From positions 248,001 through 312,000 of IMG/VR virus record IMGVR_UViG_3300029922_000001: a stretch of 64,000 bases of DNA. The stretch is one strand, 5' to 3'. This document shows positions 5,587 to 59,314 of this stretch, piece by piece. Under the pieces are notes generated by a model that was not told where the DNA came from, searched no databases, and was given only the letters and a program-made list of their open reading frames with translations. Position 1 is the first letter of the stretch. Every line of letters begins with the position of its first letter. A program made the position numbers and the translations under genes.

Positions 5587-5910
5587 ATTTAACATTTCTA
5601 CATATCTAACTAAAACCTGACCGTGACACCTTTCTTGTTCGCCCCAACCAGTTTTAGGTCTACAAAAGCATACCAATTTTTTATTATGTAAGGATTTTAC
5701 CTTATCTTTGAATATTAAATCAGTTTCTAATCTATTTTTTAGATATTTTTCATATTCTGGTAAAGTAGAACTAGGAACTTGACCTGGAGATAATACTATT
5801 GGATTGCCAAAATATCCACTCTGTCCTTTCCCTGCTCTACCTATGTAGACATATTCAGAATCTTGTTCCCAACCCTTGTTGAGATGATATAAATTTACTA
5901 CTTCAGTCAT
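5572..5910 (-). CDS. DUF4326-type protein
   Basis: VYIGR...FGNP...LHNKKLVCFCRP...CHGQVL. Confidence 0.8.
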   Translation of the reverse strand: MTEVVNLYHLNKGWEQDSEYVYIGRAGKGQSGYFGNPIVLSPGQVPSSTLPEYEKYLKNRLETDLIFKDKVKSLHNKKLVCFCRPKTGWGEQERCHGQVLVRYVEMLNANVP

Positions 5911-6463
5911 TGACTTCCTCTATATATGCTGGTGGCACATATTCTGTTAACCATACACCATTTTCAGAACGATAAAAAACAAATCTATTCAAATCCATTT
6001 GCTTTGAATCCACCTTCAATAGTGCATACTTTCCTCTTCTAGAACCAACATTAATTGCTGTTTCTATGTTTTCAGAAAGATGAACCGCATGACGATACAT
6101 CTTCTTAATTCCTTCCTCTAAAATCATTGGTACAGCATCATATGTTGTACCATGATAAAGAATGGCAGGAGGATTCAATGGAACTAACTGAAGATCAACT
6201 TCACAAGAATGACCTTGATTGGCTCTAATTCTTGCTCCTGATTCATCATAAGAATATCTTTGCTTATTATTTTCCGTCACTAACTGATCTAAATCAGCCT
6301 TTGTGATGTTAATATTAAACTTTTTCAAACCGTCTAATAGTTGTGTTACGAATACATAACCTCCAAGATCAAGCTTTTCAACTCCAATCTTTTGTGGCTC
6401 ATGTCGCAATATTAACGAAATAAACTTTCCTATTCTTTTAAATTCACGTTCATCCTTAATCAT
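5903..6463 (-). CDS. kptA: RNA 2'-phosphotransferase (Tpt1/KptA)
   Basis: ISLILRHEP, NNKQRY, RIRANQGHS, LYHGT, RHAVHLS, SENGVWLTEYVPP. Confidence 0.95.
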   Translation of the reverse strand: MIKDEREFKRIGKFISLILRHEPQKIGVEKLDLGGYVFVTQLLDGLKKFNINITKADLDQLVTENNKQRYSYDESGARIRANQGHSCEVDLQLVPLNPPAILYHGTTYDAVPMILEEGIKKMYRHAVHLSENIETAINVGSRRGKYALLKVDSKQMDLNRFVFYRSENGVWLTEYVPPAYIEEVND

Positions 6464-6485
6464 GTTCTTTTCCCTAACAATGCCC

Positions 6486-7016
6486 TTACTTTTTAGGTAA
6501 GAGCATTACTGTCATTTGTTTCCCTTGTAAGAGAATTTCCCTATCTACAGTTACAATATCATTTAGTTTTTCCAAACAATATTCCAACTTTTGCTTTCCA
6601 ATATGAGGGTGAGCGAGTTCTTTTGTTTTGAACTTGCAAACCAACTGCACTTTGTCATGCTTCCCAATAAATTCAACCGCTTTACGAATTGACGTATCCA
6701 AGTCATGTACAGCCGTATTAGGGCTAATACAAAGTGTTTTAAGTTCTTGAGGCTTTTTACGGTTGTCTTTTGCACGTTTTGCCTCTTCATACTTATATTT
6801 GCCATAGCTTACGATTTTGCAGATAGGTGGTTGTACCTTATCAGATACGCACAACAAATCTAAACCAGCATCATATGCTATTTGGATTGCATCCTTCGTG
6901 GGCATTACACCAATATTTTTGTTATTAGCGTCAATGACCGTTACTTCGGTAAATTGCTTAATGAGTCTTTCATTAAGGGGTGGGAATTCTCTGCGATTAC
7001 TTTTTTTCATCATCAT
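6486..7016 (-). CDS. infC: translation initiation factor IF-3
   Basis: LNERL...AGLDLLCVS...PPICKIVSYGKYKYEE...HDL...DKVQL...GKQMTVMLLP. Confidence 0.93.
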   Translation of the reverse strand: MMMKKSNRREFPPLNERLIKQFTEVTVIDANNKNIGVMPTKDAIQIAYDAGLDLLCVSDKVQPPICKIVSYGKYKYEEAKRAKDNRKKPQELKTLCISPNTAVHDLDTSIRKAVEFIGKHDKVQLVCKFKTKELAHPHIGKQKLEYCLEKLNDIVTVDREILLQGKQMTVMLLPKK

Positions 7017-7105
7017 AATAGATTGACCTATTATACCAGGGTATTCTTCTTCATTACAATCTTTCTCTATTCAATTTTCAATGTGCTTGAGTTTTAATTC
7101 TCGGT

Positions 7106-7150
7106 AAATAAAAAACAGGAAGTCCGACTTAGGTCTGTCGGACTTCCTGT
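7106..7150 (-). terminator. intrinsic terminator of the Thr/Ser/Cys leader (attenuator 3:4)
   Basis: 14-bp perfect stem ACAGGAAGTCCGAC/GTCGGACTTCCTGT followed by TTTTTATTT. Confidence 0.9.
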
Positions 7151-7173
7151 TGAATCTTTCTATTTGGTTTTCT

Positions 7174-7263
7174 TTATGCTTGCCCGACAACAGCATTTCT
7201 ACAGCTTCCACAACTTGTGGAACTGGTAGTACTTGATGTTGATGTTGACGTGACTAATTTCAT
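7174..7263 (-). CDS. 29-aa Thr/Ser/Cys-rich leader peptide (putative attenuator; not in ORF track)
   Basis: MKLVTSTSTSSTTSSTSCGSCRNAVVGQA*; GGTATAAT promoter upstream; terminator 23 nt after the stop. Confidence 0.85.
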   Translation of the reverse strand: MKLVTSTSTSSTTSSTSCGSCRNAVVGQA

Positions 7264-7303
7264 TTTAACCTGCTACGTTTATTATACCCAATGTTTTGAT
7301 TGT

Positions 7304-7837
7304 TTACCATGTTTTTTTGCTTTTACCATCAAAACCTGTTTCTTTTAAGATTCTATCCCAAATTTCTTCTTTTGGAGTGTTCCCTAAATATGGATCTTTT
7401 GCCCAATTCAAGTTGGTAATTTCTAGTATAACAGGAAATGGTGGAGTATAGGCTTCAGCTTCTTCTAAAGAAGAAAATTCCATTTCCATACTAAGCAAAT
7501 AATGTCTATGGATCATATATTCATTAATTTCTTCACCGCTAGATAAAAAAGTTCTTCGTTTTTCAACTCTTTTCATTTTTGGTATTAAATTGTAATTATA
7601 AAACCAATTAAAAAGAAAAATTGGGATTTTAATATTGTATTCTTTTCTGACCAAAGGATCTGAGGTTTTTAATTTAAAAGTTAATTCGCATTTATTTGAA
7701 ACTGAATATGTTTTACGAATGCGACAACTTTTAAAAAATGGAAAATATCCTTGTGAAATGTATACGTTGTGTGTTTGAGTATCCCAAGGAATATCATTTT
7801 GATTTACTATAAACTTGCGTTCAATTTCATTAGCCAT
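7304..7837 (-). CDS. CYTH / triphosphate tunnel metalloenzyme
   Basis: EIERKFIV, ISQGY, RIRK, ELTFK, RKEYNIKI, EMEF. Confidence 0.85.
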   Translation of the reverse strand: MANEIERKFIVNQNDIPWDTQTHNVYISQGYFPFFKSCRIRKTYSVSNKCELTFKLKTSDPLVRKEYNIKIPIFLFNWFYNYNLIPKMKRVEKRRTFLSSGEEINEYMIHRHYLLSMEMEFSSLEEAEAYTPPFPVILEITNLNWAKDPYLGNTPKEEIWDRILKETGFDGKSKKTW

Positions 7838-7850
7838 GCTTTAGTATACT

Positions 7851-8397
7851 TCATTTACCAGGACCCCACTCAAGACCAGGGAATTTATTTAAATTTTCCT
7901 CAATTTCTTTCCAGGGTGTGATTGATAGATATGGCTCTTTCGCCCAAGGCACATGTGTAATCTCTGTAACGTACTTGAAATCAGGAATATAAGCTTGTGC
8001 ATCTTCCAGAGAATCAAATTCCATTTCTACGATTACATAATACTGACCAGGATATTCATTAATTTGTTCTCCTGTTGGAATAATGTGTCGTGTTTTTTTA
8101 GTTTTAGTCATCCAAGGTGTAAGATACCAAAGCGGGAAAAAGACAAATTTAGGGATTTTAAAGTTATATTCCTTCCTGTCCTAAATTGGTCTGTTTATTC
8201 TTGTTTTTCTTGAATGTCAATTCGTATGTGCGGTCTTCATCTGAATATAATTCTTCATAGGTAATGATAGACTCACGAATTCTGAGATTTTTAATTAAAG
8301 GGAAATATCCTTGGGAAATGTCATGCCATTCTATAACATTTTCCCAAGGAATTTGGGTTGGTCGCACTATAAACTTGCGTTCAATTTCATTAGCCAT
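7851..8397 (-). pseudogene. second CYTH paralog, split by a +1 frameshift near 8180
   Basis: The N-half MANEIERKFIV (from 8397) and the C-half RKEYNFKIP...VEMEF are in different frames; 32 identical nt shared with the first copy's start. Confidence 0.75.
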
Positions 8398-8404
8398 ATG
8401 GCTA

Positions 8405-9382
8405 TTATACTTGAGCAAGTTCGGCTTGTAGCTCTTTAATGCGCTTTTGGAGTTCAAGTTTCTTTTTAAGTGTCGCTTCTTCTCTAAGCAAAGCTTGGAA
8501 TTCAGCATCAACTTCTTCCACTGCAACAGTCTCTAAAGCAACATGCTTCTTTATGGCTTTAGCTGCTTTAGGCATTTCTGTAGCCAAGATTGGTACATAT
8601 CCTCTTAGTATAAGAGTAAGACTTGTTGCATGATCTTCAATATCAATCCATTCTTTTTGACCAAAGGTTTGATTGGATCTGCTACCTTCAACAGTGCAAA
8701 CATCTTGTTCTCTTGATTCATTTAAAGATTTTGGCATAGCATTCGCAAATGAGTCTAAAGAATCCATTGACATGCTTGAAGCGGAATATGTTGGAGAACC
8801 AAAGCTTAATGAATTCAGTGAATTTACTGAATCTGAGCATAATCCTCTTACATTGCTTTTCATGGAAGATTGACCAATTAAAGCATTATTACTACCACAC
8901 CAGACTTCATCATGTCGTCTAGGGTAATGCTTGTAAGGGTATGAATAATCACGATACCAAGGATATGAATAATCATGATAATGATGATGATCTACTACGA
9001 TTGGAATGTAGACTGGTTGTGGTTTTTCTTTTTCTAACCAGAAGAAGGCTTCAACAACACCTTTGGAGCGGTCTTCATTAGAACCATTTTTTCCAAAATC
9101 AATAGCGTCATTACTGTCTAAAGCAGCTAATTTAAAGCATTTGTTGGTTTCATAGAAGCGTTCAAGATCAATTGCGCTGTTAGCGTTAATAATATATCCA
9201 TCACCGGATACATTTTCCCCGTCAATATGAATTTTGACCAAGGCTCTACGATTGTTTTTGTTTCTGAGGCGTAAACTATATTCTGATCCGAATGGAACTA
9301 GTACAGAATGATCGTTTCTCTCTGGGAGAAAGTCGTTTTGATTTTTGAGCTTGATAGCAAGCACGAAGTTTTTGTTATACAT
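8405..9382 (-). CDS. conserved hypothetical large-phage protein with C-terminal coiled coil
   Basis: MYNKNFVLAIK...PFGSEYSLRLRNKN...IHIDGENV; start corrected using the TATAAT box. Confidence 0.75.
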   Translation of the reverse strand: MYNKNFVLAIKLKNQNDFLPERNDHSVLVPFGSEYSLRLRNKNNRRALVKIHIDGENVSGDGYIINANSAIDLERFYETNKCFKLAALDSNDAIDFGKNGSNEDRSKGVVEAFFWLEKEKPQPVYIPIVVDHHHYHDYSYPWYRDYSYPYKHYPRRHDEVWCGSNNALIGQSSMKSNVRGLCSDSVNSLNSLSFGSPTYSASSMSMDSLDSFANAMPKSLNESREQDVCTVEGSRSNQTFGQKEWIDIEDHATSLTLILRGYVPILATEMPKAAKAIKKHVALETVAVEEVDAEFQALLREEATLKKKLELQKRIKELQAELAQV

Positions 9383-9592
9383 ATTTTTAACCATTATAAT
9401 CCTAACTCTTGTCCTCATGAGAGCGTGATTCGGCACCTTAATGGCGAGTGCCAAGGACAATTCTATTATACACCCGTTTTGAGGTTTTTTACCTTCGGAT
9501 TAAAAAACAGTCCAAACACAATAAAATTAATTATAATAAATTACCTTGTGAATAGGCTTGACAGTCTGAGGAATAGGAGGTATTATAACAAC

Positions 9593-10891
9593 ATGAGTAG
9601 CATTCTCGCTAGTAAGAAATACATTTATACGGATATCCAGGCGAATAACAATAAGTTCTGGAATATTGACCGCTATGACGATCATACAGTAATTACACGT
9701 TGGGGACGTGTTGGCGACAAAGAACAAAGCAAATCTTTCCCACATGGATCTGAAACTTCCGCAATTGCTTTTTTTAATCAAAAGTGTAGTGAAAAATCCA
9801 AGAAGGGTTATACCGAACAACGAACCATTGAATCCAATACTACCGTAAAGCAAACAACCGTTGCTTCATCCAATCTTGAAAGTATTGCTAAAAGACAGAT
9901 TCAAACTAATTCACCTGAACTAGATGCTTTGATTTCAAGGCTTACCAAAGCTAACATTCATAGCATTGTCGCAAACAGTAATATTAGCTATAACGATACA
10001 ACTGGTTTGTTTTCAACGCCATTAGGAATTATTGATGAAGATGCGATTTTGGAAGCTAGAGAACTTCTAGTGTCCATTAATTCTATTGTTCTCAATAGAG
10101 ACTTTGGAAATAAGGATTTTGCTGGAATCACCAATAAGTATTTTAGAATCGTTCCTACAGTTATCGGTAGATATCGTCAAGAACCTCAAGACCTATTCCC
10201 TAATAAGGAAACCGTTGTAAAGCAAAATGATCTTTTGGACTCACTTGAAGTCAGCTTGCAAACTGCTAAGGCAACCCCTGTAACTGCTACAACATCTGTT
10301 GAACCTGAAAAGAACATCTTTAATGTTAAGCTTCATGTGGTTGATGATCTTCCTGTTATTCAACGAATTACAGCCAAATATCAATCAACAATGAATCGTG
10401 GTCATCAGTGTTCCCATCTTGGTGTTAAGCGTGTTTATGAATTAGAAATTGGTGCTATGAAGACTGCTTTCGAAAATAAGGGTAAGCAAATTGGTGGTAT
10501 TCAAGAGTTGTGGCACGGTTCAAGAGTTGCCAATATTCTTTCTATTCTCTATAAGGGAATGATTATCCCACCTTCTAATTCTAGTTTTGTGGCTGGTCGT
10601 TTGTTTGGAGACGGTTTGTATTTTGCCAACCAAAGCACAAAGTCTCTTAATTATTCTTATGGATATTGGGATGCTAAAGGCAAGGACGAAAATTGCTTTA
10701 TGTTCCTTTGTGATGTAGCTATGGGCAAGCACTATACTCCTAAGTATTTACAATCCAATATTCCTGCTGGATATGATAGTTTCTGGGCTAAGGCTGGTAT
10801 TTCTGGCGTACAGAATGATGAAATCATCGTTCCACGTCTTTATCAAGCCAATCCTAGATATTTGATCGAATTCTCACCAGGTGGTAGATAA
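9593..10891 (+). CDS. WGR-domain PARP-like ADP-ribosyltransferase
   Basis: NNNKFW...RWGRVG (WGR); STPLG...TNKYFRIVP (regulatory domain); LWHGS, GDGLYFA and NDEIIV (H-Y-E triad); TTGACA-17-TATTAT promoter sets the start at 9593. Confidence 0.93.
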   Translation: MSSILASKKYIYTDIQANNNKFWNIDRYDDHTVITRWGRVGDKEQSKSFPHGSETSAIAFFNQKCSEKSKKGYTEQRTIESNTTVKQTTVASSNLESIAKRQIQTNSPELDALISRLTKANIHSIVANSNISYNDTTGLFSTPLGIIDEDAILEARELLVSINSIVLNRDFGNKDFAGITNKYFRIVPTVIGRYRQEPQDLFPNKETVVKQNDLLDSLEVSLQTAKATPVTATTSVEPEKNIFNVKLHVVDDLPVIQRITAKYQSTMNRGHQCSHLGVKRVYELEIGAMKTAFENKGKQIGGIQELWHGSRVANILSILYKGMIIPPSNSSFVAGRLFGDGLYFANQSTKSLNYSYGYWDAKGKDENCFMFLCDVAMGKHYTPKYLQSNIPAGYDSFWAKAGISGVQNDEIIVPRLYQANPRYLIEFSPGGR

Positions 10892-12396: not shown

Positions 12397-12909
12397 ATGA
12401 AAAATTTTATTATAGACGTAGAAGCTAATGGACCCTGCCCCGGTCTTTATAGTATGGTGAGTTTTGGGGCTGTTTTAGTAGACGGTAAAAATCAAGTAAC
12501 ATTCAAAGGTGAAGTTAGACCAATTACTGAATTATACGATCAAGGTGCTTATGATGCTATTGGTGTAACCTATGCAGAACACTTAACGTATGATGATCCT
12601 GAAAAGGTTATGCTTGCTTTTAATAAGTGGGTTAATAATACCACAGGAAATGATAGGGCTACTTTATGGAGCGATAATAACCAATTTGATGGACAATATA
12701 TGAATTATTATTTCCATAGATATGTGGGAAGTAATCCATTTGGATTTTCTTCAAGACGTATTGGTGATTTGTATTCTGGATATGTTAAAGATATTAGTAC
12801 AGCCACTAAATGGAAGAATTTAAGAGATACAAAACACAATCATGAGGCTTTAACAGACGCTATAGGCAATGCCGAAGCCTTATGGAAAATAATGCAATGG
12901 ATGAAATAA
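12397..12909 (+). CDS. DEDDh 3'-5' exonuclease (Rv2179c-like)
   Basis: IIDVEANGP...SDNNQFD...HNHEALTDA. Confidence 0.88.
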   Translation: MKNFIIDVEANGPCPGLYSMVSFGAVLVDGKNQVTFKGEVRPITELYDQGAYDAIGVTYAEHLTYDDPEKVMLAFNKWVNNTTGNDRATLWSDNNQFDGQYMNYYFHRYVGSNPFGFSSRRIGDLYSGYVKDISTATKWKNLRDTKHNHEALTDAIGNAEALWKIMQWMK

Positions 12910-16781: not shown

Positions 16782-16841
16782 GCTTTATTATAAGGAAATA
16801 TTGATGGCTTTTACATGAATCAGTTATGGTATACTAACTCC

Positions 16842-18290
16842 ATGTTTGACACAGATCGTTTAATTCATTTAGAAAAGCTACAAGAAGCTGGTTTAAATCC
16901 ATTTGATAATTATGGATTTAAGATGACTTCACCAATTGGGTTATATCTTGATACTTTTAATGTATTGATTAATGCTGTTTGTTTTGATAATACACATAGT
17001 TTATGTGGTCGCATTATTTCTATGCGTATTATGGGTAATATGGCTTTTGTTGATATTTCCGATGGTTCTCACAAGGTCCAGGCTGTTTTCCGTAAGAACC
17101 TAATGGATGCTGACACTTATAAGGCATTAAGATACCTAGATGAAGGTGATCATATTGGCGTGACTGGCAATCCATTTCTTACCCAAGCTGGTGAGAAGTC
17201 AATTCTTGTTACAGAAATTAAGGTTCTAAGTAAGTGTCTTATCCCTTTACCAATTGGTAAGAGGAAGGATGGGGAAGTCTTTGATGCAGTTGTAGATCCA
17301 GATATTAGGCTTAGGCATCGTCATATTGACCTTGTAGCCAATCCAGATAATAGGGCGATGTTAATTGCACGTTCAAAGATGGTAAGCTGTATTAGGCGAT
17401 TTTTAGATCAAGAAGATTTTCTTGAAGTTGAAACACCTTTACTAACTGAGGTTGCTGGTGGAGCAAGTGCTAAGACATTTGATACTCATTATAATGCTTA
17501 TGATTTAGATATGCATCTTCGTATTTCTTTGGAAATTCCTTTGAAGAAGTTGATTTGTGGTGATATTCCTGCCGTTTATGAAATTGGTAAGGTTTTCCGC
17601 AATGAAGGTGCTGACGCAACTCATAATCCAGAATTTACACTTTTGGAATGGTATCGTGCGTATTCAACACCAGAAGAGGAAATGCAAAGGGTTCAAGATT
17701 TAGTTTCATATTTGATGCAAAAGTGGGATGCTGATCCTGCATGGGATGTAATTACTGTGCGTGATGCTATTTTAACCTATGTGCCTGATGTTTCCTGGTA
17801 TGATCTTGATGTTATTGAGAAAATGAGAGAACATGCTCGTAGAAATGGAATCCATGTAACAGATCAAGATACTATGGGGAAGATTGAAGAAAAGCTAGTC
17901 GCTAAGTTCGTTGAGCCTAATCTGTTATATCCCACATTCTTAACAGAACATCATATCAGTAATTCACCTTTAGCTAGAACAGCACCAGGGAAGCCTGATC
18001 GTGCTTATAGATTTGAAGCATATATTAATGGTTATGAAATCGCTAATGGTTATTCTGAGTTAAACAATGCAGTTGAACAAAAGGAACGATTAGAGGATCA
18101 AGTAGCTCAAAGAAATGGTGGAGACGCTGAAGCACAACCTTATGATCAAGATTTTATTTATGCTCTTGCCTCCGGTTGCCCTGCCGTAACGGGCGTGGGA
18201 ATCGGTCTAGATAGATTGGCAATGGTATTATATGGAGCAACACAAATTAGGCAAGTAATATTTTTCCCAACAATGAAGCATAGGAGTTAA
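16842..18290 (+). CDS. lysS: lysyl-tRNA synthetase (class II)
   Basis: OB-fold GRII..R..G..AFVD; EVETPLL; motif 2 FRNEGADATHNPEF; motif 3 GVGIGLDRL. Confidence 0.97.
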   Translation: MFDTDRLIHLEKLQEAGLNPFDNYGFKMTSPIGLYLDTFNVLINAVCFDNTHSLCGRIISMRIMGNMAFVDISDGSHKVQAVFRKNLMDADTYKALRYLDEGDHIGVTGNPFLTQAGEKSILVTEIKVLSKCLIPLPIGKRKDGEVFDAVVDPDIRLRHRHIDLVANPDNRAMLIARSKMVSCIRRFLDQEDFLEVETPLLTEVAGGASAKTFDTHYNAYDLDMHLRISLEIPLKKLICGDIPAVYEIGKVFRNEGADATHNPEFTLLEWYRAYSTPEEEMQRVQDLVSYLMQKWDADPAWDVITVRDAILTYVPDVSWYDLDVIEKMREHARRNGIHVTDQDTMGKIEEKLVAKFVEPNLLYPTFLTEHHISNSPLARTAPGKPDRAYRFEAYINGYEIANGYSELNNAVEQKERLEDQVAQRNGGDAEAQPYDQDFIYALASGCPAVTGVGIGLDRLAMVLYGATQIRQVIFFPTMKHRS

Positions 18291-21715: not shown

Positions 21716-22162
21716 CTATGGTGATTTCGCCCAATAGTTTTTATAATGTTTAACTTCAGCATCTAAATCAAAAGGTAATCCTTTAACATGGTTGAAGTAA
21801 GCTTTAGATATAATGCCAGTCATATCATCCGCATGAAGTACTCCTAAATTTTTAAACCACTTAGCTAATACGGAGTCATGCCACAATCCCCAGGTATTGC
21901 GCATATAAGTACCATAGCCATGATGTGGCATCATTTCATAAGTGGATTTAGCATCATTTTTGATGAAATCTATATATTCAGGAGTTGCCACTGAATCAAA
22001 ATAAGCGATAACTTCATCTAGATTATTTGGGATATTGGTTGCACTAATAGCGGGTAAGATTTTTACAACCTTAACTAGCCTATTAAAATATTCATTATTA
22101 TCGAAAGCGTCTTGAATTGATTTGTCTGTGACTTTTTCCATGCGTACTTCATCATTGTTCAT
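21716..22162 (-). CDS. DUF6794-like protein
   Basis: HHGYGTYMRNTWGLW...GVLHADDMTGII. Confidence 0.6.
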   Translation of the reverse strand: MNNDEVRMEKVTDKSIQDAFDNNEYFNRLVKVVKILPAISATNIPNNLDEVIAYFDSVATPEYIDFIKNDAKSTYEMMPHHGYGTYMRNTWGLWHDSVLAKWFKNLGVLHADDMTGIISKAYFNHVKGLPFDLDAEVKHYKNYWAKSP

Positions 22163-22680
22163 AGTTTATTATACTTAATCAGATTCTCTTCTTGTGTGAT
22201 TTTATCCCAAGGTGCTTTAGATTGAAGAACTTTTTCAACAGTTGGATCATAATCCCAACGTTTAATCATATTTTGAATACTTTTAAGAGGTACACTATGT
22301 TGATTTCTTTTAGCTAATTCTTGTGCATCGAATTTCCAAGGTGTTTCAGGTTCATGAAAACTAACTTTATAATCATATTTTTGAGCAAGTTTTACGTACT
22401 CTCGAAATTCATAAAAAGAACAATTTGTATTGTCACAAATAATAGGAGTAATACCTTGTTGCATTGCCACTTCAGTTCTTCTTTCATTTTCTTTATGATT
22501 TTCAGTTAGTTTATTAACATCAAATTTATATTCACCATTAACCATAAATAGATCATCAGTAGAATGAATAACTCCACCTTTTCCTAATTGCTTAGAAAGA
22601 AAACTTTTGCCAGAACCGGGAAGTCCGCGAATTATTCTTAACTCTTTTTCTTGTTGTGCTTTTCTATACCAAGTAGACAT
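22159..22680 (-). CDS. AAA_33 / N4BP2-like polynucleotide kinase
   Basis: RGLPGSGKS, STDD, ICDNTN, LAKRNQHSVP. Confidence 0.88.
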   Translation of the reverse strand: MSTWYRKAQQEKELRIIRGLPGSGKSFLSKQLGKGGVIHSTDDLFMVNGEYKFDVNKLTENHKENERRTEVAMQQGITPIICDNTNCSFYEFREYVKLAQKYDYKVSFHEPETPWKFDAQELAKRNQHSVPLKSIQNMIKRWDYDPTVEKVLQSKAPWDKITQEENLIKYNKL

Positions 22681-22687
22681 AATTCGA

Positions 22688-23395
22688 TTATACCATTTTT
22701 CTATCAATAATTTCTCTAGTAATATATCCAGTAAACTTCTGCCAAGATTTCCGCGTCATTTGTTTTCTTACTCTTTTATATAAAGAATGTTTCTTAATTG
22801 CTTTAGTTATTGCTTTACCATTGAGCTTAATAGAGTCAACATCAATGCACGACATAAAGCTTTTTGCTAAAGCTTGAACTTCTAGGGGATTGTTAAAATA
22901 CGCATACTCTCCCATGTCATAGATGTTGATATATGTTTTGTCTTTACGTTTTTCTGTATACTCATTTTGAAAATTAGTAATATACAAATCATAATCAGCA
23001 TGAAAATCTGGCACACATCCTGCTTGTAAACAGTGAACCAACTCATGTCCCAATCTATCAACATAATCTGCGAGACAATGACATTCACATATATCAAGAT
23101 ATATGTAATAGTACATATATCTTTCACCAAAACCGCTGGAATCATCATCTAAAAGAAATATTCTAATAGGATATTTAAACATTTTTAGTGAGTTTAACCA
23201 ATTTTCTATTTCTAATAGTTTTCTTCTAAATTTATTACCATTAATGGAACTTTCTAATATACCAATACTTTCCTCAATACAAGGATGACGTTGTTTAACT
23301 GTTTTTGTTTTTATTTCACTTAATTTCCAATTAACTTCAATTAATCGTTTAGCTAATTCAACTTCAATTCCATGTGTATCGGGGATTTTAGGCAT
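22688..23395 (-). CDS. HExxH metallopeptidase-like protein
   Basis: GHELVHCLQ...YFNNPLEVQA; paralogous to 60393-61091. Confidence 0.6.
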   Translation of the reverse strand: MPKIPDTHGIEVELAKRLIEVNWKLSEIKTKTVKQRHPCIEESIGILESSINGNKFRRKLLEIENWLNSLKMFKYPIRIFLLDDDSSGFGERYMYYYIYLDICECHCLADYVDRLGHELVHCLQAGCVPDFHADYDLYITNFQNEYTEKRKDKTYINIYDMGEYAYFNNPLEVQALAKSFMSCIDVDSIKLNGKAITKAIKKHSLYKRVRKQMTRKSWQKFTGYITREIIDRKMV

Positions 23396-27068: not shown

Positions 27069-27078
27069 ATTTATCTCG

Positions 27079-27162
27079 TCCCGGCGAGTGGACTCGAACC
27101 ACCACGCCCTTTCAGGCAACAGATTTTGAGTCTGCCGCATCTACCAATTACACCACACCGGG
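27079..27162 (-). tRNA. tRNA-Leu(CAA)
   Basis: Canonical type II cloverleaf, CT-CAA-AA. Confidence 0.92.
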
Positions 27163-27181
27163 ATATTTCTCGTATAAGAAA

Positions 27182-27361
27182 TTAATTCTTATTTTGTGAA
27201 TCAAGTTGTCTTACTCTACTAAATAAAGCATCTCTCATTTCTTTGTTTTCACTTACTTCTTTAGCGTATGCACCCATCATATTTCTAAACATTTTTTGAC
27301 CTTCTTCAGTATTCATTGCTGATTCAATTATTTTCATTTTTTCAGGACTTGTTATAATCAT
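27182..27361 (-). CDS. 59-aa hypothetical protein inside the Leu array (not in ORF track)
   Basis: GGAG SD; MIITSPEKMKIIESAMNTEEGQKMFRN...DSQNKN*. Confidence 0.7.
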   Translation of the reverse strand: MIITSPEKMKIIESAMNTEEGQKMFRNMMGAYAKEVSENKEMRDALFSRVRQLDSQNKN

Positions 27362-27382
27362 ATTAATTCTCCAATATCTCGG

Positions 27383-27484
27383 TGAGCAAACAGGGACTTG
27401 AACCCTGATGACATTTTACTGTCGATGGGTTAGCAAAATTCTGATCTTGCTAAGCCCATTGCGTCTACATTTCGCCATTCGCCC
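27383..27484 (-). tRNA. tRNA-Leu(TAG)-like gene with an 18-nt hairpin insertion in the anticodon loop
   Basis: ATGGG/CCCAT stem around CTTAG[CAAGATCAGAATTTTGCT]AA; long V-arm; A73. Confidence 0.8.
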
Positions 27485-27493
27485 ATATTCTCG

Positions 27494-27579
27494 TGCGGAG
27501 TAAAAGATTTGAACTTTCACCTGTTGATAAGACAGAATGGGACCTTAGCCCATCGCGGCTACCATTACGCCAACCCCGC
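27494..27579 (-). tRNA. tRNA-Leu(AAG)
   Basis: ATGGG-CTAAGGT-CCCAT arm, long V-arm, A73. Confidence 0.85.
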
Positions 27580-27588
27580 ATATTCTCG

Positions 27589-27670
27589 TCCGGGCGAGAG
27601 GGTTTGAACCTCCATGTCTTGCGACGGCAGGTTTTAAACCTGCTGCGGCTACCAATTTCGCCACACCCGG
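27589..27670 (-). tRNA. tRNA-Leu(TAA)
   Basis: GCAGG-TTTAAAA-CCTGC arm, long V-arm. Confidence 0.92.
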
Positions 27671-37757: not shown

Positions 37758-38207
37758 TTGAGAATACTATTTTTAGATGACATGCCTGAACGCTATGACT
37801 ACTTCATGGGTTTGTTGAACCGTCCAGATATTGAAGTTGATTGGGCTAAAAATGCTGATGAATTTTATCCGATGCTTGAAAATCCAAGATATGACATTTT
37901 CTTTTTGGATCATGATTTAAGTGCAGAACATTACACTAAATTAAACACCCTAGATCAAGCAGATCATACAAAAATAGAATGTAAAGAAGAAACTGGATAT
38001 GATATTACTAAACGATTAATCCACTTACAAAAAGACAAACATCCTGATTATATTGTTGTTCATACACTGAATTCTCAAGGTGGTAAAAATATGATGTCTT
38101 GTTTAAGAGAAATGGATTCAACTCTTATTCGCGCATATTTCGCATTTCCTGATTTTCAGAATGTGGTTTATCAACTCGCCCACCAAAAAATTAGTAAAAC
38201 TAATTAG
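37758..38207 (+). CDS. cyclic-phosphate-processing receiver-domain protein
   Basis: ILFLDD, FFLDHDL, TGYDI, VVHTLNSQGGKNM. Confidence 0.8.
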   Translation: MRILFLDDMPERYDYFMGLLNRPDIEVDWAKNADEFYPMLENPRYDIFFLDHDLSAEHYTKLNTLDQADHTKIECKEETGYDITKRLIHLQKDKHPDYIVVHTLNSQGGKNMMSCLREMDSTLIRAYFAFPDFQNVVYQLAHQKISKTN

Positions 38208-39283: not shown

Positions 39284-39369
39284 AGTATTGTTATTTTAAA
39301 TTTGCAATTATTAATATCCTTTTTTATTTATTATCCATTTTTGATGATCGTTTGATGTATACTAGAATT

Positions 39370-39882: not shown

Positions 39883-40761
39883 ATGATGAAATCAAAATCT
39901 CAAGAGGTGTGGATGCTACGCGGCGTCCCCGGCAGTGGAAAAAGCACTTGGGCAAAGGAATTTATTAAAAATAATCCTGGTTATGTTCGCACTAATAACG
40001 ATGAAATTAGACTTGAAATGTTTAATCGCGTTTTTGATAAGAATGATACTAAGGCTGTTGATGCTGAGCGAAACAGAGTTATTAAGGAAACCCTTGATAA
40101 TGGTCTTAGTATTGTTATTGATAACACTAATTTGTCACCTAAGCGTGAAGACGAATACAAGACGTTGGCGAAGAAGTATGGTGCTGAATTTAAGATTCAG
40201 TGTTTTATGCATGTACCTTTACGTGATTGTTTGGCAAACAACTATAAGCGACCTAATCCGGTTGGTGAGAAGATTATCAAGGATATGTACAGACAGTTTG
40301 TAGAGCCTTTGTTGAAGCCAACTCCTGTTGAATATGTAGAGGGTTTAGAGGACGTGTACGTGTGCGATATGGATCAAACATTATCTTTAATGAAAGGAAT
40401 TCGTGGACCTTTCGAATGGCATAAGGTTAATTTAGATTTACCAAATATTCCGGTAGTTAAATTAATTCAAAAACTTGCTAAGACAAATAAAATCATTATT
40501 ATGTCTGGTAGGGATGGTTGTTGCCGTGATTTAACTATTGAATGGCTTAATCAACATGAAGTTCCGTTTTTTGAATTGCATATGAGGGCGATGAATGACT
40601 CTAGAAAGGATAGTACTGTGAAGGAAGAACTTTATAAATCAAAATTACAATATCGTTTTAATATTCTAGGTTGGTTCGACGACCGCGAAGCGGTTTGTGA
40701 ACTAGTTTATTCATTAGGATTACCACTGTTCCGTGTGGGGGACCCTCATAGTTCGTTTTGA
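39883..40761 (+). CDS. pseT: polynucleotide 5'-kinase / 3'-phosphatase (T4 PseT-like)
   Basis: GVPGSGKST kinase; HAD motif CDMDQTL; MSGRD; DSTVKEE; FDDREAV. Confidence 0.93.
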   Translation: MMKSKSQEVWMLRGVPGSGKSTWAKEFIKNNPGYVRTNNDEIRLEMFNRVFDKNDTKAVDAERNRVIKETLDNGLSIVIDNTNLSPKREDEYKTLAKKYGAEFKIQCFMHVPLRDCLANNYKRPNPVGEKIIKDMYRQFVEPLLKPTPVEYVEGLEDVYVCDMDQTLSLMKGIRGPFEWHKVNLDLPNIPVVKLIQKLAKTNKIIIMSGRDGCCRDLTIEWLNQHEVPFFELHMRAMNDSRKDSTVKEELYKSKLQYRFNILGWFDDREAVCELVYSLGLPLFRVGDPHSSF

Positions 40762-53951: not shown

Positions 53952-54524
53952 ATGAGTAAAGTAAAGTTGGTACAAGGTAGTGTTTTGGAACAGGATTGTC
54001 AAGTCCTCGTGAATGCAGCAAATATACATATGCGCGGAGGTGGCGGTTTAGACGCAGTTTTTCATAAAACTGCTGGTCCTAATCTTTTAGTTGAACTTAA
54101 AAAAGCCGCGCCCTATAAGGTGAAGACTGGAGAGTGTATTGTTACTACCGCCTGTGATTTGCTAAGTGATGTTACTAAGTTGATTCTTCACGTAGCTGGT
54201 CCAGTTTATGACAGTAAGGTAACTGACGACATTGAGTTGCTTTCCGCTTATTACAACGTCTTTCGATGCGCTTATCAAATGAACGTGACATCCATCGCTG
54301 TTCCTGGTATCTCTGTTGGCATCTTTGGATTCCCTATTGAAAGAGCGTCTAAGCTTGCAGTAATGGGAATGCTTTTGGCGGCACAAAACTTTGCAGATAA
54401 ATGTACATTGCTTGACGAAATTCGCTTTGTTATGTTTAAAGATGAAGAATATGATGCATTTTATGCTGCTTTGGAATCTGTTCAAGGTGAAGAACTCTAT
54501 GGCTTAGAAGTGGAGCTAGATTAA
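53952..54524 (+). CDS. macrodomain ADP-ribosylhydrolase
   Basis: LVNAAN..MRGGGGLD, LHVAGP, SIAVPGISVGIFGFP. Confidence 0.95.
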   Translation: MSKVKLVQGSVLEQDCQVLVNAANIHMRGGGGLDAVFHKTAGPNLLVELKKAAPYKVKTGECIVTTACDLLSDVTKLILHVAGPVYDSKVTDDIELLSAYYNVFRCAYQMNVTSIAVPGISVGIFGFPIERASKLAVMGMLLAAQNFADKCTLLDEIRFVMFKDEEYDAFYAALESVQGEELYGLEVELD

Positions 54525-55958: not shown

Positions 55959-56339
55959 ATGACGATAGATAATGTAAAAGTGAGTGCGGCTGTTGAGGCA
56001 ATTAGTGGATTGTCAGCTAGTGAATTAAAGACACTAAAAGATGATTTGTATGCAAGGTTTAACATCAAAGAATATGAAGCTATGCCTGTATTTACACCTG
56101 TAACAAAGGTTGAAGAGGTTGAAGAACAGACAGAGTTTGATGTAATTCTAACTAGTGCTGGTGATTCTAAGTTGAATGTCATTAAGGTAGTTCGTGAACT
56201 TACTAGCTTGGGTCTTAAAGAATCCAAAGATTTAGTTGATAACGTGCCTAGAGCTATTAAGGAAGCGGTGTCCATTGAAACAGCAAATAAGATTAAAGAA
56301 TCAATTGTTGCAGTTGGTGGAGTCGTTCTTATTAAGTAA
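55959..56339 (+). CDS. rplL: ribosomal protein bL12 (L7/L12), full length
   Basis: [38 protein letters not shown]. Confidence 0.97.
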
Positions 56340-56540: not shown

Positions 56541-56565
56541 TTTTGTTTTTAATTAAACGAAATAT

Positions 56566-57387: not shown

Positions 57388-57424
57388 GAAGGATTGTTGT
57401 GTTTAAACTTATAATTTTATAATC

Positions 57425-57940
57425 ATGAATGAAAAATTAGCTTTAAAATGTTTGTTGTATGCCGCTAACGAGTTAGATGGTCCCCAATTTAAAAAAGAAG
57501 TTGACGCTATTACTAATATTATGCAGAGAGTTGCGGCACGACCAACTCAACAAAAATTACAACAGACAAATAATGCTAAATACGGTCCAAGATTACAACA
57601 AGCAGTTAAGGATTTTTGGCGTAAATATAAAACGCATTACCCAGCAGAAGCAGACGCTTTACAAAATGAATGTTTTATGGTGTTGCCAGTTGCATTACTT
57701 GATGTAGGAAGACAAGCTCTAAAAGATTCTGGTGCGGATTTTAAATTCTCAGCGACAGATAAGGGTTATGAAAACTTTTTAGATCAATATTTTATTGATT
57801 ATTTTAAGTTTTTTTTGAAACAGGCTGGTTTTTATAAAAATGAAAGCCAAGAAGAAGATTTTGACACTTGGCATCAAAATAATATAAACAAAACAAAAGA
57901 CATTGTGCCTGGTAATTTAGATTATTCTATAGACAAGTGA
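57425..57940 (+). CDS. hypothetical protein
   Basis: ORF track. Confidence 0.7.
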   Translation: MNEKLALKCLLYAANELDGPQFKKEVDAITNIMQRVAARPTQQKLQQTNNAKYGPRLQQAVKDFWRKYKTHYPAEADALQNECFMVLPVALLDVGRQALKDSGADFKFSATDKGYENFLDQYFIDYFKFFLKQAGFYKNESQEEDFDTWHQNNINKTKDIVPGNLDYSIDK

Positions 57941-57966
57941 TCTAATATATATGCTATAATTAATTC

Positions 57967-58284
57967 ATGAGAAATCCTTGGAGGCAAGCCATTGATGAAG
58001 TCAGATCATTATCTGACGAAGAAGCTTTACAAAGGGCTTCAGTTAATGGTAGAATCCGTGGAGTAATCAACAGTGCAGAACAAGCACGTAGTATCTTAAT
58101 TAAGATGTATGGTCATGACAACATCAACTATCAGAAGAAGTTGATTAATGGTGAAGTCGAACAAATACATTATAAAATTGATCAACCTATGTTGTTTTCA
58201 TCAGAAGAATTAAAAGAACCAGATTTGACTTTTGAAGAAAAGATTCAACGATGGAATTTGAATACTCAACAAGCAATAAGGTGA
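57967..58284 (+). CDS. hypothetical protein
   Basis: TGCTATAAT-6nt-ATG. Confidence 0.7.
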   Translation: MRNPWRQAIDEVRSLSDEEALQRASVNGRIRGVINSAEQARSILIKMYGHDNINYQKKLINGEVEQIHYKIDQPMLFSSEELKEPDLTFEEKIQRWNLNTQQAIR

Positions 58285-58285
58285 T

Positions 58286-59314
58286 ATGATGAAACTAGAT
58301 AGACAAGCCTTTAATGAAGCGGTAAGGAAGCGTGACAAAGATCAATGTGTCATGTGTAAATCACCAGCAAGCGAAGTTCATCACATTATCGAACGCAAAC
58401 TTTTTGTGGATGGTGGCTATGTTATGGATAATGGTGCCACATTATGTGGTGACTGCCATCTGAAAGCTGAACAAACAATTATCAGTGCGAAACAAATTAG
58501 ACTGGCTGCTGGTATTACGAATGTGGTGCTTCCTGAAGGTGTTGGTGACGATACAGATTTTGATAAATGGCTCAATCCAGTATTAACAAACAATAGAAGA
58601 TTAAAAGGTCCACTGTTTGAGACTGAACAAGTTCAAAAGGTTTTAAAGGATGCAAATCTATTGGATCTTTTTGATGATTATCTCAAATATCCAAAAACAC
58701 CGCATTTGTGGTATTCTAATACTTCTAGTGATGATAAATATATTGAATCAATGAGAATTATTGAAAATGAAGAAATTGTAGTTACTGAAAAAATGGACGG
58801 AGAATCACTAACTTGGTATTCAGATGGCTATTATCATGCACGTAGTTTAAGCGGTCGGGGAGGGGAAGATAGAAGCCTTGCCGCTGCGATAGCGAATCAA
58901 ACACAGTACGATTTACCCAAAGGTTGGCGTGTTTGCGCTGAAAACGTTGTGCGACAACATTCTATTGTTTATAAAAATTTAAACAGCTTTATATATGTTT
59001 ATTCTATTTGGGATGAAAATAATAATGCTCTTTCTTGGAAAGAAACAGAAGAATGGTGTGAACTATTAGGTCTAACTACTGTTCCTGTTTTATATAAAGG
59101 TAAATATAATAAAGAATTCATTCATTCATTATACTCTCCAGTAAAAGAAAATGGAGATGAAATGGAAGGTTATGTTATTCGCGTGGCTAGATCATTTCAT
59201 TTTAGTGAGTTTAGTCAGTGTATCGTAAAATGGGTTAGAAAAAATCATGTTAATAAAGACAGTAAACACTGGAGATATTCGGCAATTAAGAATAATTCAT
59301 TAAGTTTTATTTAA
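58286..59314 (+). CDS. HNH-domain / ATP-dependent RNA ligase fusion
   Basis: CVMC..ASEVHHI...NGATLCGDCH; KYPKTPHL, motif I TEKMDG, AEN, EGYV, KWVRKNHV. Confidence 0.88.
   Translation: MMKLDRQAFNEAVRKRDKDQCVMCKSPASEVHHIIERKLFVDGGYVMDNGATLCGDCHLKAEQTIISAKQIRLAAGITNVVLPEGVGDDTDFDKWLNPVLTNNRRLKGPLFETEQVQKVLKDANLLDLFDDYLKYPKTPHLWYSNTSSDDKYIESMRIIENEEIVVTEKMDGESLTWYSDGYYHARSLSGRGGEDRSLAAAIANQTQYDLPKGWRVCAENVVRQHSIVYKNLNSFIYVYSIWDENNNALSWKETEEWCELLGLTTVPVLYKGKYNKEFIHSLYSPVKENGDEMEGYVIRVARSFHFSEFSQCIVKWVRKNHVNKDSKHWRYSAIKNNSLSFI

What the first reader, a model, noticed from the sequence alone, without database searches (positions are those of the whole stretch)
5903..59314. Complete heal-seal-clean RNA repair/splicing kit including Tpt1 beside the tRNA array
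The window encodes a T4-like kinase/phosphatase (39883), a second polynucleotide kinase (22159), an ATP-dependent RNA ligase (58286), a cyclic-phosphate-processing receiver domain (37758), two CYTH copies, and Tpt1/KptA (5903) inside the Thr/Ser operon. Established: kinase, ligase and Tpt1 form the fungal/plant tRNA splicing route, and Pnkp plus Rnl repairs PrrC-cut tRNA in T4. Inference: together these could process the insert-bearing tRNAs or repair host-cut tRNAs. No splicing endonuclease was identified.
Basis: partly seen in the sequence, partly recalled or inferred. Interest (0 to 1): 0.65.

Follow-up and report, generated by a model that had tools for sequence, protein, structure and literature searches.

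The report
Jumbo-phage RNA repair genes, odd tRNAs
A 441-kb peat phage carries a known type of RNA-end repair and ADP-ribose clean-up gene set (Tpt1, T4-like Pnkp, RNA ligases, cREC, Macro, NADAR); this is ordinary for jumbo phages, but several of its tRNA genes carry short hairpin inserts in the anticodon loop that nothing in the genome can yet be shown to remove.

Summary
Five of the seven named genes are real and sit at the stated coordinates. They are Tpt1/KptA, a full-length T4-type Pnkp, a second Pnkp-like kinase, a cREC domain protein and an HNH-fused RNA ligase. The two CYTH copies were not found anywhere in the genome.

The window lies in a 441,498-bp jumbo phage from peat, whose host is bacterial. 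I also found Macro, NADAR, DUF4326 and WGR-PARP genes in the window. Four more RNA ligase genes lie outside it, including a T4 Rnl1 type.

This repertoire has already been catalogued for jumbo phages (Iyer et al. 2021, 2022), so the kit is a new member of a known kind. It is most likely a defence against host tRNA-cutting nucleases.

Tpt1 does share a transcription unit with the Thr/Ser tRNA array. That adjacency is not conserved: the closest relative has no tRNA nearby, and only 5 of 80 viral KptA loci have a tRNA within 2 kb, against 17 of 80 for the ligase family.

The insert-bearing tRNAs are real. Five or six genes have the anticodon arm extended by a tight hairpin (z about -5). They have no BHB motif, and the genome has no EndA, RtcB, 2H or RNase III gene. 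Whether the inserts are spliced could not be tested.

The parts
5903..6463 (-). Tpt1/KptA RNA 2'-phosphotransferase (186 aa)
   Evidence: PF01885 at 1.6e-44. PDB 7kw8 at 2.5e-44 with R20, H21, R69 and R124 aligned to the catalytic tetrad. These residues are invariant in a 28-sequence alignment.
5572..5910 (-). DUF4326 protein (112 aa). It overlaps the Tpt1 stop, and its own stop is overlapped by the first tRNA.
   Evidence: PF14216 at 2.8e-14. PMC9503650 proposes this family as a rhodanese-phosphatase clade that acts on ribose-linked phosphates of ADP-ribose.
3433..5586 (-). Cys/Ser/Thr tRNA array downstream of Tpt1. It has seven ordinary tRNAs and two with inserts: 3433-3524 is Cys-GCA with a 17-nt insert, and 5296-5394 is probably Thr-UGU with an 18-nt insert.
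   Evidence: ARAGORN with and without introns. The arms fold with z = -4.8 and -5.0, with 0 of 200 shuffles as stable. The DNA is identical in other peat runs.
27078..27670 (-). Leu tRNA array. It includes 27381-27484, a type II tRNA with A73 and an 18-nt hairpin insert, probably Leu-UAG.
   Evidence: ARAGORN. Rfam tRNA at 38.6 bits across 102 nt. The arm folds with z = -5.0.
941..1453 (-). NADAR domain protein
   Evidence: PF08719 at 9.3e-28. NADAR lies within about 9.5 kb of KptA (within 4.5 kb in five) in 6 of 80 other viral loci, and also in the close relative L017.
9308..10891 (+). WGR + PARP catalytic domain protein, divergent from the Tpt1 unit
   Evidence: PF00644 at 2.2e-24. WGR appears in the Pfam tally and in precomputed domains.
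22159..22707 (-). Stand-alone Pnkp-like P-loop kinase with no phosphatase domain
   Evidence: AAA_33 at 4.5e-14. phrog_505 'polynucleotide kinase' at 4.4e-11. 33% identical to the Pnkp kinase domain. The GLPGSGKS and DNTN motifs are present. No PDB hit.
37758..38207 (+). cREC (cyclic-phosphate-processing receiver) domain protein, 1.7 kb upstream of Pnkp
   Evidence: PF20274 at 4.7e-15. The acidic residues LDD (aa 6-8) and LDHD (aa 50-53) are present. The activity is only predicted in the literature.
39883..40761 (+). T4-type bifunctional polynucleotide kinase/phosphatase (Pnkp)
   Evidence: AAA_33 plus HAD_PNKP. Full-length alignment to T4 Pnkp 1ltq at 4.6e-30. Motifs confirmed.
53952..54524 (+). 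Macro domain protein, upstream in the same + strand block as the ligase
   Evidence: PF01661 at 4.4e-27. The block is syntenic in relative L023.
58286..59314 (+). HNH endonuclease domain (aa about 20-60) fused to an ATP-dependent RNA ligase nucleotidyltransferase domain (aa 162-317)
   Evidence: PF01844 plus PF09414. Full-length match to phrog_24030 at 9.5e-115. Motif I EKMDGES is at aa 168, EGYVIR at 294 and KWVRK at 315. The HNH Cys/His/Asn residues and the ligase Lys are invariant in a 25-sequence alignment.

Best explanation
The window holds part of a dispersed RNA-end repair and NAD/ADP-ribose clean-up repertoire of a jumbo phage that infects a bacterium. It is not one operon.

The most likely role is to restore tRNAs, host or phage-encoded, that host anticodon nucleases or other metal-independent RNases have cut. 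Two routes are plausible.

**Route 1, T4-like.** Pnkp converts 2',3'-cyclic-phosphate and 5'-OH ends to 3'-OH and 5'-phosphate. One of the five ATP-dependent ligases then seals the break. These are the HNH-fused ligase in the window, and an Rnl1 type, an OB-fold (Rnl5-like) type, an Rnl2-like type and a short paralogue elsewhere in the genome.

**Route 2, NAD-dependent.** cREC is predicted, but not shown, to open the cyclic phosphate to a 2'-phosphate. The phosphatase-less second kinase phosphorylates the 5' end, and a ligase seals. Tpt1/KptA then transfers the leftover 2'-phosphate to NAD+. [quoted passage not shown]

**Shown here:** homology, intact catalytic motifs and recurrent gene neighbourhoods. 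**Inferred:** every enzymatic step and the substrates.
For: - Domain hits and catalytic residues are intact for Tpt1, Pnkp, the second kinase, cREC and the HNH ligase.
- Five ligase genes are present.
- Macro, NADAR and PARP are in the window.
- The host is bacterial. The phage encodes IF3, bL12 and a GH108 peptidoglycan hydrolase, and ARAGORN calls a tmRNA.
- Recurrent linkage in independent viral contigs. The HNH ligase and KptA overlap by 8 nt in L097. A stand-alone AAA_33 kinase lies about 0.9 kb upstream of KptA in L119, two small ORFs away. A ligase domain lies 4 to 8 kb from KptA in L047 and L119. NADAR is near KptA in 6 of 80 loci.
- Macro, the ligase and NADAR are syntenic in an 81%-identical relative.
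- The ligase family sits within 2 kb of tRNA genes in 17 of 80 viral loci.
- The literature describes the same repertoire and proposes the same roles: PMC7824862 and PMC9503650.
Against: - The genes are spread over 58 kb on both strands, with unrelated genes between them. Co-regulation is not shown.
- cREC activity has never been demonstrated for any member.
- No 2H phosphodiesterase is present, so route 2 rests on a prediction.
- From my own knowledge of T4 Pnkp, a T4-type Pnkp makes Tpt1 unnecessary for route 1.
- Tpt1 family enzymes also ADP-ribosylate 5'-phosphate ends (PMC6182162), so Tpt1 may have another role.
- No host nuclease is known, because the host is unknown.
- The RNA run holds contigs only over parts of Tpt1 and IF3, and these could derive from DNA.
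Confidence: 0.6

Rival explanations
1. The kit, or part of it, is a tRNA splicing pathway. The hairpin inserts in five or six phage tRNA genes are cut out, and the halves are rejoined by a phage ligase.

In the version I find most coherent, a double-strand-specific nuclease makes two cuts with a 2-nt 3' stagger in the extended anticodon helix. This could be host RNase III or the HNH domain of the ligase. The cuts leave 3'-OH and 5'-phosphate ends that a ligase seals directly.
For: - Five tRNA genes share one architecture: a 5-bp anticodon stem, one unpaired nucleotide, then a 5 to 10-bp helix that buries the anticodon. In four the unpaired base is at position 32; in the Gly candidate positions 32 and 33 pair and G34 is the unpaired base. 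The three arms in the window fold with z = -4.8 to -5.0.
- In all five, removing the insert with a 2-nt 3'-staggered cut gives a canonical 7-nt loop with U33 and A37. The resulting anticodon matches independent clues: Cys-GCA beside a Cys tRNA with U73; Thr-UGU in the Thr/Ser array with U73; Leu-UAG with a long variable arm and A73 in the Leu array; Lys-UUU in the Lys array with A73; Gly-GCC with U73 and G1-C2-G3.
- The genome holds five ligase genes.
- The HNH ligase family is enriched beside tRNA arrays, and its nuclease and ligase residues are both conserved.
Against: - No spliced RNA was seen; no RNA contig covers the array.
- No EndA, RNase III, RtcB or 2H gene is present.
- The stagger argument has free parameters. 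It partly follows from U33-A38 and N34-A37 pairing. The sixth case does not fit it.
- Cultured phages with the HNH ligase have normal tRNAs: RsoM2USA 0 of 46 tRNAs with an insert, ME3 0 of 5, CcrSC one dubious call in 28.
- In 160 other viral loci only 1 or 2 of 31 intron calls are tidy hairpin extensions.
- Two of the insert-bearing genes duplicate an intact isoacceptor nearby, so they could be dispensable.
Confidence: 0.12
2. Tpt1 belongs mainly to an NAD+/ADP-ribose conflict module rather than to RNA repair. The module would comprise NADAR, DUF4326, KptA and WGR-PARP around 941-10891, plus Macro and cREC. It would write, erase or detoxify ADP-ribose marks or signals on nucleic-acid ends, or counter host NAD-based immunity. 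Its position beside tRNAs would be incidental.
For: - Four ADP-ribose-related genes lie within 10 kb of each other around Tpt1.
- In phage G, KptA sits inside an NAD salvage cluster.
- In SCTP-2 the ligase neighbours an NMN adenylyltransferase/ADP-ribose pyrophosphatase-like gene.
- NADAR is the most frequent recurrent KptA neighbour.
- Tpt1 enzymes cap 5'-phosphate ends with ADP-ribose (PMC6182162, PMC12678800).
- KptA occurs in phages with no tRNA genes.
Against: - KptA is directly coupled to an RNA ligase in L097, and lies about 0.9 kb from a polynucleotide-kinase-like gene in L119.
- The two readings are not exclusive, because the ADP-ribose enzymes can simply process the Tpt1 by-product.
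Confidence: 0.2
3. The hairpin-insert tRNA genes are not precursors of working tRNAs. They could be decoys or nuclease-resistant tRNA mimics that hide the anticodon from host anticodon nucleases. They could also be decaying gene copies hit by small palindromic insertions.
For: - The anticodon is fully base-paired in every case.
- Cys-GCA and Thr-UGU have intact twins in the same array.
- No removal machinery was found.
Against: - The rest of each cloverleaf is intact, and acceptor ends and discriminators fit real isotypes.
- The inserts differ in sequence but share one architecture, which suggests selection rather than decay.
- Leu-UAG, Lys-UUU and Gly-GCC have no intact twin called in the genome, apart from the Lys-UUU gene at genome 172047.
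Confidence: 0.08

Closest known systems
Jumbo-phage RNA repair and NAD+/ADP-ribose systems, as catalogued by Iyer, Anantharaman, Krishnan, Burroughs and Aravind (Viruses 2021, PMC7824862; Viruses 2022, PMC9503650)
   Same: The same domain families in the same kind of genome: Rnl2-family ligases including N-terminal HNH fusions, several ligase paralogues per phage, PNK-HAD, cREC, KptA, Macro, NADAR and DUF4326, with many phage tRNAs.
   Different: Nothing essential. This phage adds Tpt1 in one transcription unit with a tRNA array, and five ligase genes in one genome.
Phage T4 Pnkp plus Rnl1 repair of PrrC-cut tRNA-Lys
   Same: A full-length Pnkp homologue with kinase and DxDxT phosphatase motifs. 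An Rnl1-type ligase exists in the genome.
   Different: The Rnl1 gene lies about 92 kb beyond the window. The window's own ligase is an HNH-fused PF09414 enzyme. Tpt1, cREC and a second kinase have no T4 counterpart.
Fungal/plant tRNA splicing by Sen endonuclease, Trl1 (2H phosphodiesterase, kinase, ligase) and Tpt1
   Same: Kinase, ATP-dependent ligase and Tpt1 activities are all encoded. A phosphatase-less kinase exists that could preserve a 2'-phosphate.
   Different: There is no endonuclease and no 2H domain. The ligase is not of the Trl1 type, and whether it requires a 2'-phosphate is unknown. The inserts are not at a uniform 37/38 site and lack the bulged splice sites.
'Enigmatic introns' in Lak megaphage tRNAs (Devoto et al. 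2019, PMC6784885)
   Same: A huge phage of a bacterium has tRNA genes interrupted in the anticodon loop, with no known removal mechanism. It also has an RNA ligase related to the window's ligase domain.
   Different: The Lak inserts are long (93 nt in tRNA-Tyr), and one looks tRNA-like. Here they are 17 to 31 nt perfect hairpins. No Prevotella (Lak) phage is among the ten named genera that hold a KptA hit; two genera were not named. This genome shows no sign of TAG recoding.
Archaeal bulge-helix-bulge tRNA introns cut by EndA and joined by RtcB
   Same: Short protein-dependent inserts in or near the anticodon loop whose sequence pairs with the anticodon.
   Different: No BHB motif, no EndA and no RtcB. 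The host is bacterial.

Membership tests
Tpt1/KptA RNA 2'-phosphotransferase | Match to PF01885 above the curated cut-off | tested here: met
   152.5 bits against a cut-off of 26.
Tpt1/KptA RNA 2'-phosphotransferase | Catalytic Arg-His-Arg-Arg tetrad | tested here: met
   R20, H21, R69 and R124 align to R16, H17, R64 and R119 of 7kw8. The residue roles come from my knowledge of the Tpt1 literature. All four are invariant in 28 homologues.
Tpt1/KptA RNA 2'-phosphotransferase | NAD+-dependent removal of an internal RNA 2'-phosphate | not testable with these tools
   Needs an enzyme assay.
T4-type Pnkp | N-terminal P-loop kinase plus C-terminal HAD phosphatase with DxDxT, collinear with T4 Pnkp | tested here: met
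   AAA_33 plus HAD_PNKP. 1ltq aligned over aa 10-286. GVPGSGKST is at aa 14 and DMDQT at aa 162.
ATP-dependent RNA ligase (PF09414, Rnl2/Rnl5-like nucleotidyltransferase) | Nucleotidyltransferase motifs I (KxDG), IV and V | tested here: met
   EKMDGES at aa 168, EGYVIR at aa 294 and KWVRK at aa 315. K, D, G and E of motif I are invariant in 25 homologues.
HNH-fused RNA ligase family (phrog_24030) | Full-length match, including the CxxC...HH...N...CxxCH HNH module | tested here: met
   9.5e-115 over aa 3-339. The HNH residues are invariant.
cREC | Match to PF20274 and retained receiver-type acidic residues | tested here: met
   56.5 bits against a cut-off of 27. LDD and LDHD are present.
cREC | Cyclic phosphodiesterase activity | not testable with these tools
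   Only predicted in the literature for the whole family.
CYTH | Match to PF01928 or any CYTH signal | tested here: not met
   No match at E<=1 in the whole genome. None in the Pfam tallies of window ORFs.
Fungal/plant heal-seal-clean tRNA splicing pathway | tRNA splicing endonuclease | tested here: not met
   PF01974 gives no match at E<=10.
Fungal/plant heal-seal-clean tRNA splicing pathway | 2H cyclic phosphodiesterase that yields a 2'-phosphate | tested here: not met
   PF13563 gives no match at E<=1. Only this one 2H model was searched.
Fungal/plant heal-seal-clean tRNA splicing pathway | Ligase that needs and leaves a junction 2'-phosphate | not testable with these tools
   The ligase is not of the Trl1 type by Pfam. 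Its specificity needs an assay.
Archaeal/eukaryal protein-spliced tRNA intron | Bulge-helix-bulge or bulged splice sites at 37/38 | tested here: not met
   The arms fold as continuous helices with a single 1-nt bulge.
Group I intron in tRNA | Catalytic core of roughly 200 nt or more | tested here: not met
   The inserts are 17 to 31 nt. No intron family was hit in Rfam.
Conserved kptA-tRNA array linkage | kptA lies beside tRNA genes in other phages | tested here: not met
   A tRNA lies within 2 kb in 5 of 80 viral loci, against 17 of 80 for the ligase. There is none in the closest relative or in the three cultured phages inspected.

The most novel reading that the evidence does not exclude
The short hairpin inserts are genuine introns removed by a route new for tRNA. 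Two staggered cuts are made in a double-stranded extension of the anticodon stem, by host RNase III or by the HNH domain of the phage ligase. One of the phage's five RNA ligases then seals the ends directly. This would be a protein-dependent tRNA splicing pathway in a bacterial virus with no EndA-type endonuclease. It could keep phage tRNAs hidden from host anticodon nucleases until they are matured.
Probability: 0.12. Interest if true: 0.85.

Novelty: new member of a known kind. Interest (0 to 1): 0.45.

Why it matters
The repair kit itself adds one more example to a published catalogue, so it matters little.

Two points are worth keeping. First, across 160 viral loci the HNH-fused ligase, not Tpt1, is the gene that tends to lie beside phage tRNA arrays. 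Tpt1 recurs next to that ligase, a phosphatase-less kinase and NADAR. This gives concrete enzyme pairs for testing whether an NAD-dependent 'yeast-like' repair route exists in phages.

Second, a bacterial virus with five or six tRNA genes whose anticodons are buried in tight hairpin inserts, and with no known way to remove them, turns the old 'enigmatic phage tRNA intron' puzzle into a small, testable system.

Tried and rejected
**Searched for in the whole genome and not found**
- CYTH, EndA, RNase III, RtcB and 2H PF13563.

**TAG recoding**
- Two tRNA-CUA genes exist. However, reading TAG as sense raises ORF coverage no more than the TGA control does (0.916 against 0.921, from 0.876). Table 11 was therefore kept throughout.

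**Direct test of splicing**
- One metatranscriptome run holds only three contigs, over Tpt1 and IF3, and none over the tRNAs. Three DNA runs show the inserts unchanged.

**Search for relatives that carry the arrays**
- No viral contig matched by the Tpt1 peptide search.
- No exact match to a Leu tRNA 3' half.
- The metagenome scan with an array-embedded ORF returned only the same phage.
- The related ENA contigs are not held for whole-record searches.

**Other dead ends**
- The two unannotated ORFs beside cREC and Pnkp (37319-37756 and 39352-39843) gave no Pfam, PHROG or Atlas lead.
- The ligase and the second kinase have no PDB relative by phmmer.
It was redone from genome coordinates.
- The insert-free (joined) tRNA models were not sent to Rfam or any other search. 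Only the 7-nt mature loops were enumerated, from referenced coordinates. ARAGORN's own intron mode stands in for that step.
- The Lak-type long introns and the SCTP-2 tRNA-Asn insert (45 nt, with a T-arm-like hairpin) were compared and judged a different kind of insert.

Full report
**Where the window lies**

The window is bases 248,001-312,000 of a 441,498-bp IMG/VR virus record. GC content is about 32%. The same phage also occurs as a 521,591-bp ENA contig. All runs that hold it are peat metagenomes, plus one lake run.

The host is bacterial. The phage encodes IF3, ribosomal protein bL12 and a GH108 peptidoglycan hydrolase, and ARAGORN calls a tmRNA. Table 11 reads the genome well. Making TAG a sense codon helps no more than the TGA control, despite two tRNA-CUA genes.

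**The observation**

Five of the seven named genes are confirmed at exactly the stated coordinates.

| Gene | Coordinates | Main evidence |
|---|---|---|
| Tpt1/KptA | 5903-6463(-) | PF01885 1.6e-44; 7kw8 2.5e-44; R20-H21-R69-R124 in place and invariant among 28 homologues |
| Pnkp | 39883-40761(+) | Collinear with T4 Pnkp 1ltq, 4.6e-30; P-loop and DMDQT present |
| Second kinase | 22159-22707(-) | Phosphatase-less paralogue of the Pnkp kinase domain, 33% identity, 9e-10 |
| cREC | 37758-38207(+) | PF20274 4.7e-15; receiver acidic residues kept |
| RNA ligase | 58286-59314(+) | PF09414 1.8e-27 |

The ligase also carries an N-terminal HNH domain. The whole protein matches phrog_24030 end to end at 9.5e-115. 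Both the HNH residues and the ligase lysine are invariant in 25 homologues.

The 'two CYTH copies' could not be found by any route.

- The window also encodes a Macro domain protein (53952-54524), NADAR (941-1453), DUF4326 (5572-5910, overlapping the Tpt1 stop) and a WGR-PARP protein (9308-10891).
- The genome has three further PF09414 ligases. One has an OB fold, one is Rnl2-like with KLHGTN, and one is short.
- The genome also has a T4 Rnl1-type ligase at 402,770-403,822 (2c5u, 7.4e-19).
- It has no RtcB, no 2H phosphodiesterase (one model searched), no EndA and no RNase III.

**Tpt1 and the tRNA array**

A 15-bp terminator at 7114-7151 and a promoter-like site at 7059-7030(-) precede IF3, Tpt1 and DUF4326. 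The first tRNA of the array begins inside the last codons of DUF4326. No minus-strand terminator-like site was found downstream of these within the scanned stretch (2000-9600), which includes the array. So 'inside the Thr/Ser operon' is fair as a physical description.

The adjacency is not conserved, as four comparisons show.
- The closest KptA in a phage-like contig (64% identity, L017) is flanked by PTH2 and NADAR. It has no tRNA within 10 kb.
- In phage G, KptA sits in an NAD salvage cluster. In phiCD211 and Erwinia phage Y3 it has no RNA context.
- Y3 has no detectable tRNA at all.
- Of 80 IMG/VR loci anchored on KptA, 5 have a tRNA within 2 kb and 11 have an array of five or more tRNAs within 10 kb. 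For 80 loci anchored on the HNH ligase family the figures are 17 and 23 (Fisher p = 0.010 and 0.033).

These loci were not de-replicated, so the figures are indicative only.

**Is it a functional kit?**

The genes are scattered over 58 kb on both strands. What supports a functional connection is recurrence elsewhere.
- In L097 the HNH ligase and KptA overlap by 8 nt.
- In L119 a stand-alone AAA_33 kinase lies about 0.9 kb upstream of KptA, two small ORFs away, and a ligase domain lies 8 kb away.
- NADAR accompanies KptA in 6 of 80 loci and in L017.
- Macro, the ligase and NADAR are syntenic in an 81%-identical relative.

All of this matches what Iyer and colleagues described for jumbo phages. 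They list several Rnl2-family ligases including HNH fusions, PNK-HAD, cREC, KptA, Macro, NADAR and DUF4326. The finding is therefore a new member of a known kind.

**Most likely mechanism**

Two parallel repair routes for RNase-cut tRNA are plausible.
- A T4-like route uses Pnkp plus a ligase.
- An NAD-dependent route uses cREC, the phosphatase-less kinase, a ligase and then Tpt1. The ADP-ribose enzymes would dispose of the by-product.

Only homology, motifs and neighbourhoods are shown. Every catalytic step is inferred. From what is known of T4 Pnkp (my own knowledge), a T4-type Pnkp leaves a 2'-OH, so Tpt1 is not needed in the first route. Tpt1 may also, or instead, act on ADP-ribose chemistry.

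**The insert-bearing tRNAs**

ARAGORN's intron mode finds three in the window.

| Window coordinates | ARAGORN call | Insert |
|---|---|---|
| 3433-3524 | Cys | 17 nt |
| 5296-5394 | 'Val' | 18 nt |
| 27381-27484 | 'Arg' | 18 nt |

The third is also an Rfam tRNA hit at 38.6 bits. More lie elsewhere in the genome.

In five of them the anticodon stem runs on into a further 5 to 10-bp helix that buries the anticodon, interrupted by one unpaired base (position 32 in four; G34 in the Gly candidate). The sixth is ambiguous. The three arms in the window fold with z = -4.8 to -5.0, and 0 of 200 shuffles fold as well. The DNA is identical in independent peat runs.

They are not BHB introns and are far too short for group I introns. 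Aligning isotype clues (discriminator base, variable arm, neighbours) with the possible junctions suggests Cys-GCA, Thr-UGU, Leu-UAG, Lys-UUU and Gly-GCC. In each case the junction corresponds to a pair of cuts with a 2-nt 3' stagger in the helix. That is the geometry of RNase III-type cleavage, from my own knowledge, and it would leave ends a ligase can join without Pnkp or Tpt1.

This is an idea, not a result. The argument has free parameters and no RNA evidence exists. Cultured phages with the same ligase family have normal tRNAs. Tidy hairpin inserts are rare in 160 other viral loci. Lak megaphage 'introns' are of a different, longer kind.

I did not submit insert-free joined tRNA models to any search tool. 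That step is left out.

**Verdict**

The repair reading is supported but already known. The 'complete' and 'splicing' claims are not supported. The hairpin-insert tRNAs are the one feature that remains unexplained and is worth an experiment.

Noticed in passing
window 6486-7016(-), 55959-56339(+), 16815-18290(+), 62703-63899(+), 45574-45927(+): The phage encodes translation parts: IF3, ribosomal protein bL12, a class II Asp/Lys/Asn-type aminoacyl-tRNA synthetase and a class I Trp/Tyr-type synthetase. ARAGORN also calls a tmRNA with tag GKSYAYVG, but Rfam did not report it at gathering score.
   Followed up: partly
genome 172128-172200 and 353602-353673 (outside the window): Two tRNA genes have the amber-reading anticodon CUA. 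ORF coverage gives no sign that TAG is reassigned: TAG-sense gives 0.916 against 0.921 for the TGA-sense control.
   Followed up: partly
window 27929-29275(+) and 35196-36305(-): Two TnpB-like genes (OrfB_IS605 plus Cas12f1-like TNB). The first lies directly beside the Leu tRNA array.
   Followed up: no
window 9308-10891(+): A WGR plus PARP catalytic domain protein in a phage, divergent from the IF3-Tpt1-DUF4326-tRNA unit. None of 14 control prokaryote genomes has a PARP hit.
   Followed up: no
L097 8962-10546 (IMG/VR contig of 31.5 kb): The HNH-fused RNA ligase and KptA form an overlapping gene pair (8-nt overlap) in an unrelated viral contig. This is the tightest ligase-Tpt1 linkage I saw.
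   Followed up: partly
160 IMG/VR loci, L042-L201: The HNH-fused ligase family lies within 2 kb of a tRNA gene in 17 of 80 viral loci, against 5 of 80 for KptA (p = 0.010). The loci were not de-replicated.
   Followed up: partly
L014 (ENA contig k141_1408874, 521,591 bp): The same phage is assembled elsewhere as a contig 80 kb longer than the IMG/VR record, which CheckV rates as 100% complete. The record may therefore be incomplete, or the longer contig may carry a repeat.
   Followed up: no
window 25947-26813(-), 33717-34529(+), 20798-21694(-): Free-standing homing-type endonucleases: an HNH (phrog_10822, 1.4e-51) just downstream of the Leu array, a GIY-YIG plus NUMOD3, and a weak HNH next to the second kinase operon.
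   Followed up: no
window 26900-26967 and 26995-27053 (-): Two weak tRNA-like Rfam hits (22.7 and 20.5 bits, below gathering score) lie just downstream of the Leu array. They may be degraded or unusual tRNAs.
   Followed up: no
window 6116-6475, RNA run X15: One metatranscriptome contig joins 6394-6475 to 6116-6223 ('goes back 360') inside Tpt1. It is a single low-depth contig and is most likely an assembly artefact.
   Followed up: no
L029 3730-3851 (Salicola phage SCTP-2, record 298729-298847): A cultured 440-kb phage with the closest cultured HNH ligase has a tRNA-Asn with a 45-nt insert that contains a T-arm-like hairpin. The tRNA is supported by a 119-nt Rfam hit.
   Followed up: partly
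window 12397-12909(+): An Rv2179c-like 3'-5' exoribonuclease domain protein, by precomputed Pfam on the same gene in L013. It could act on tRNA 3' ends.
   Followed up: no
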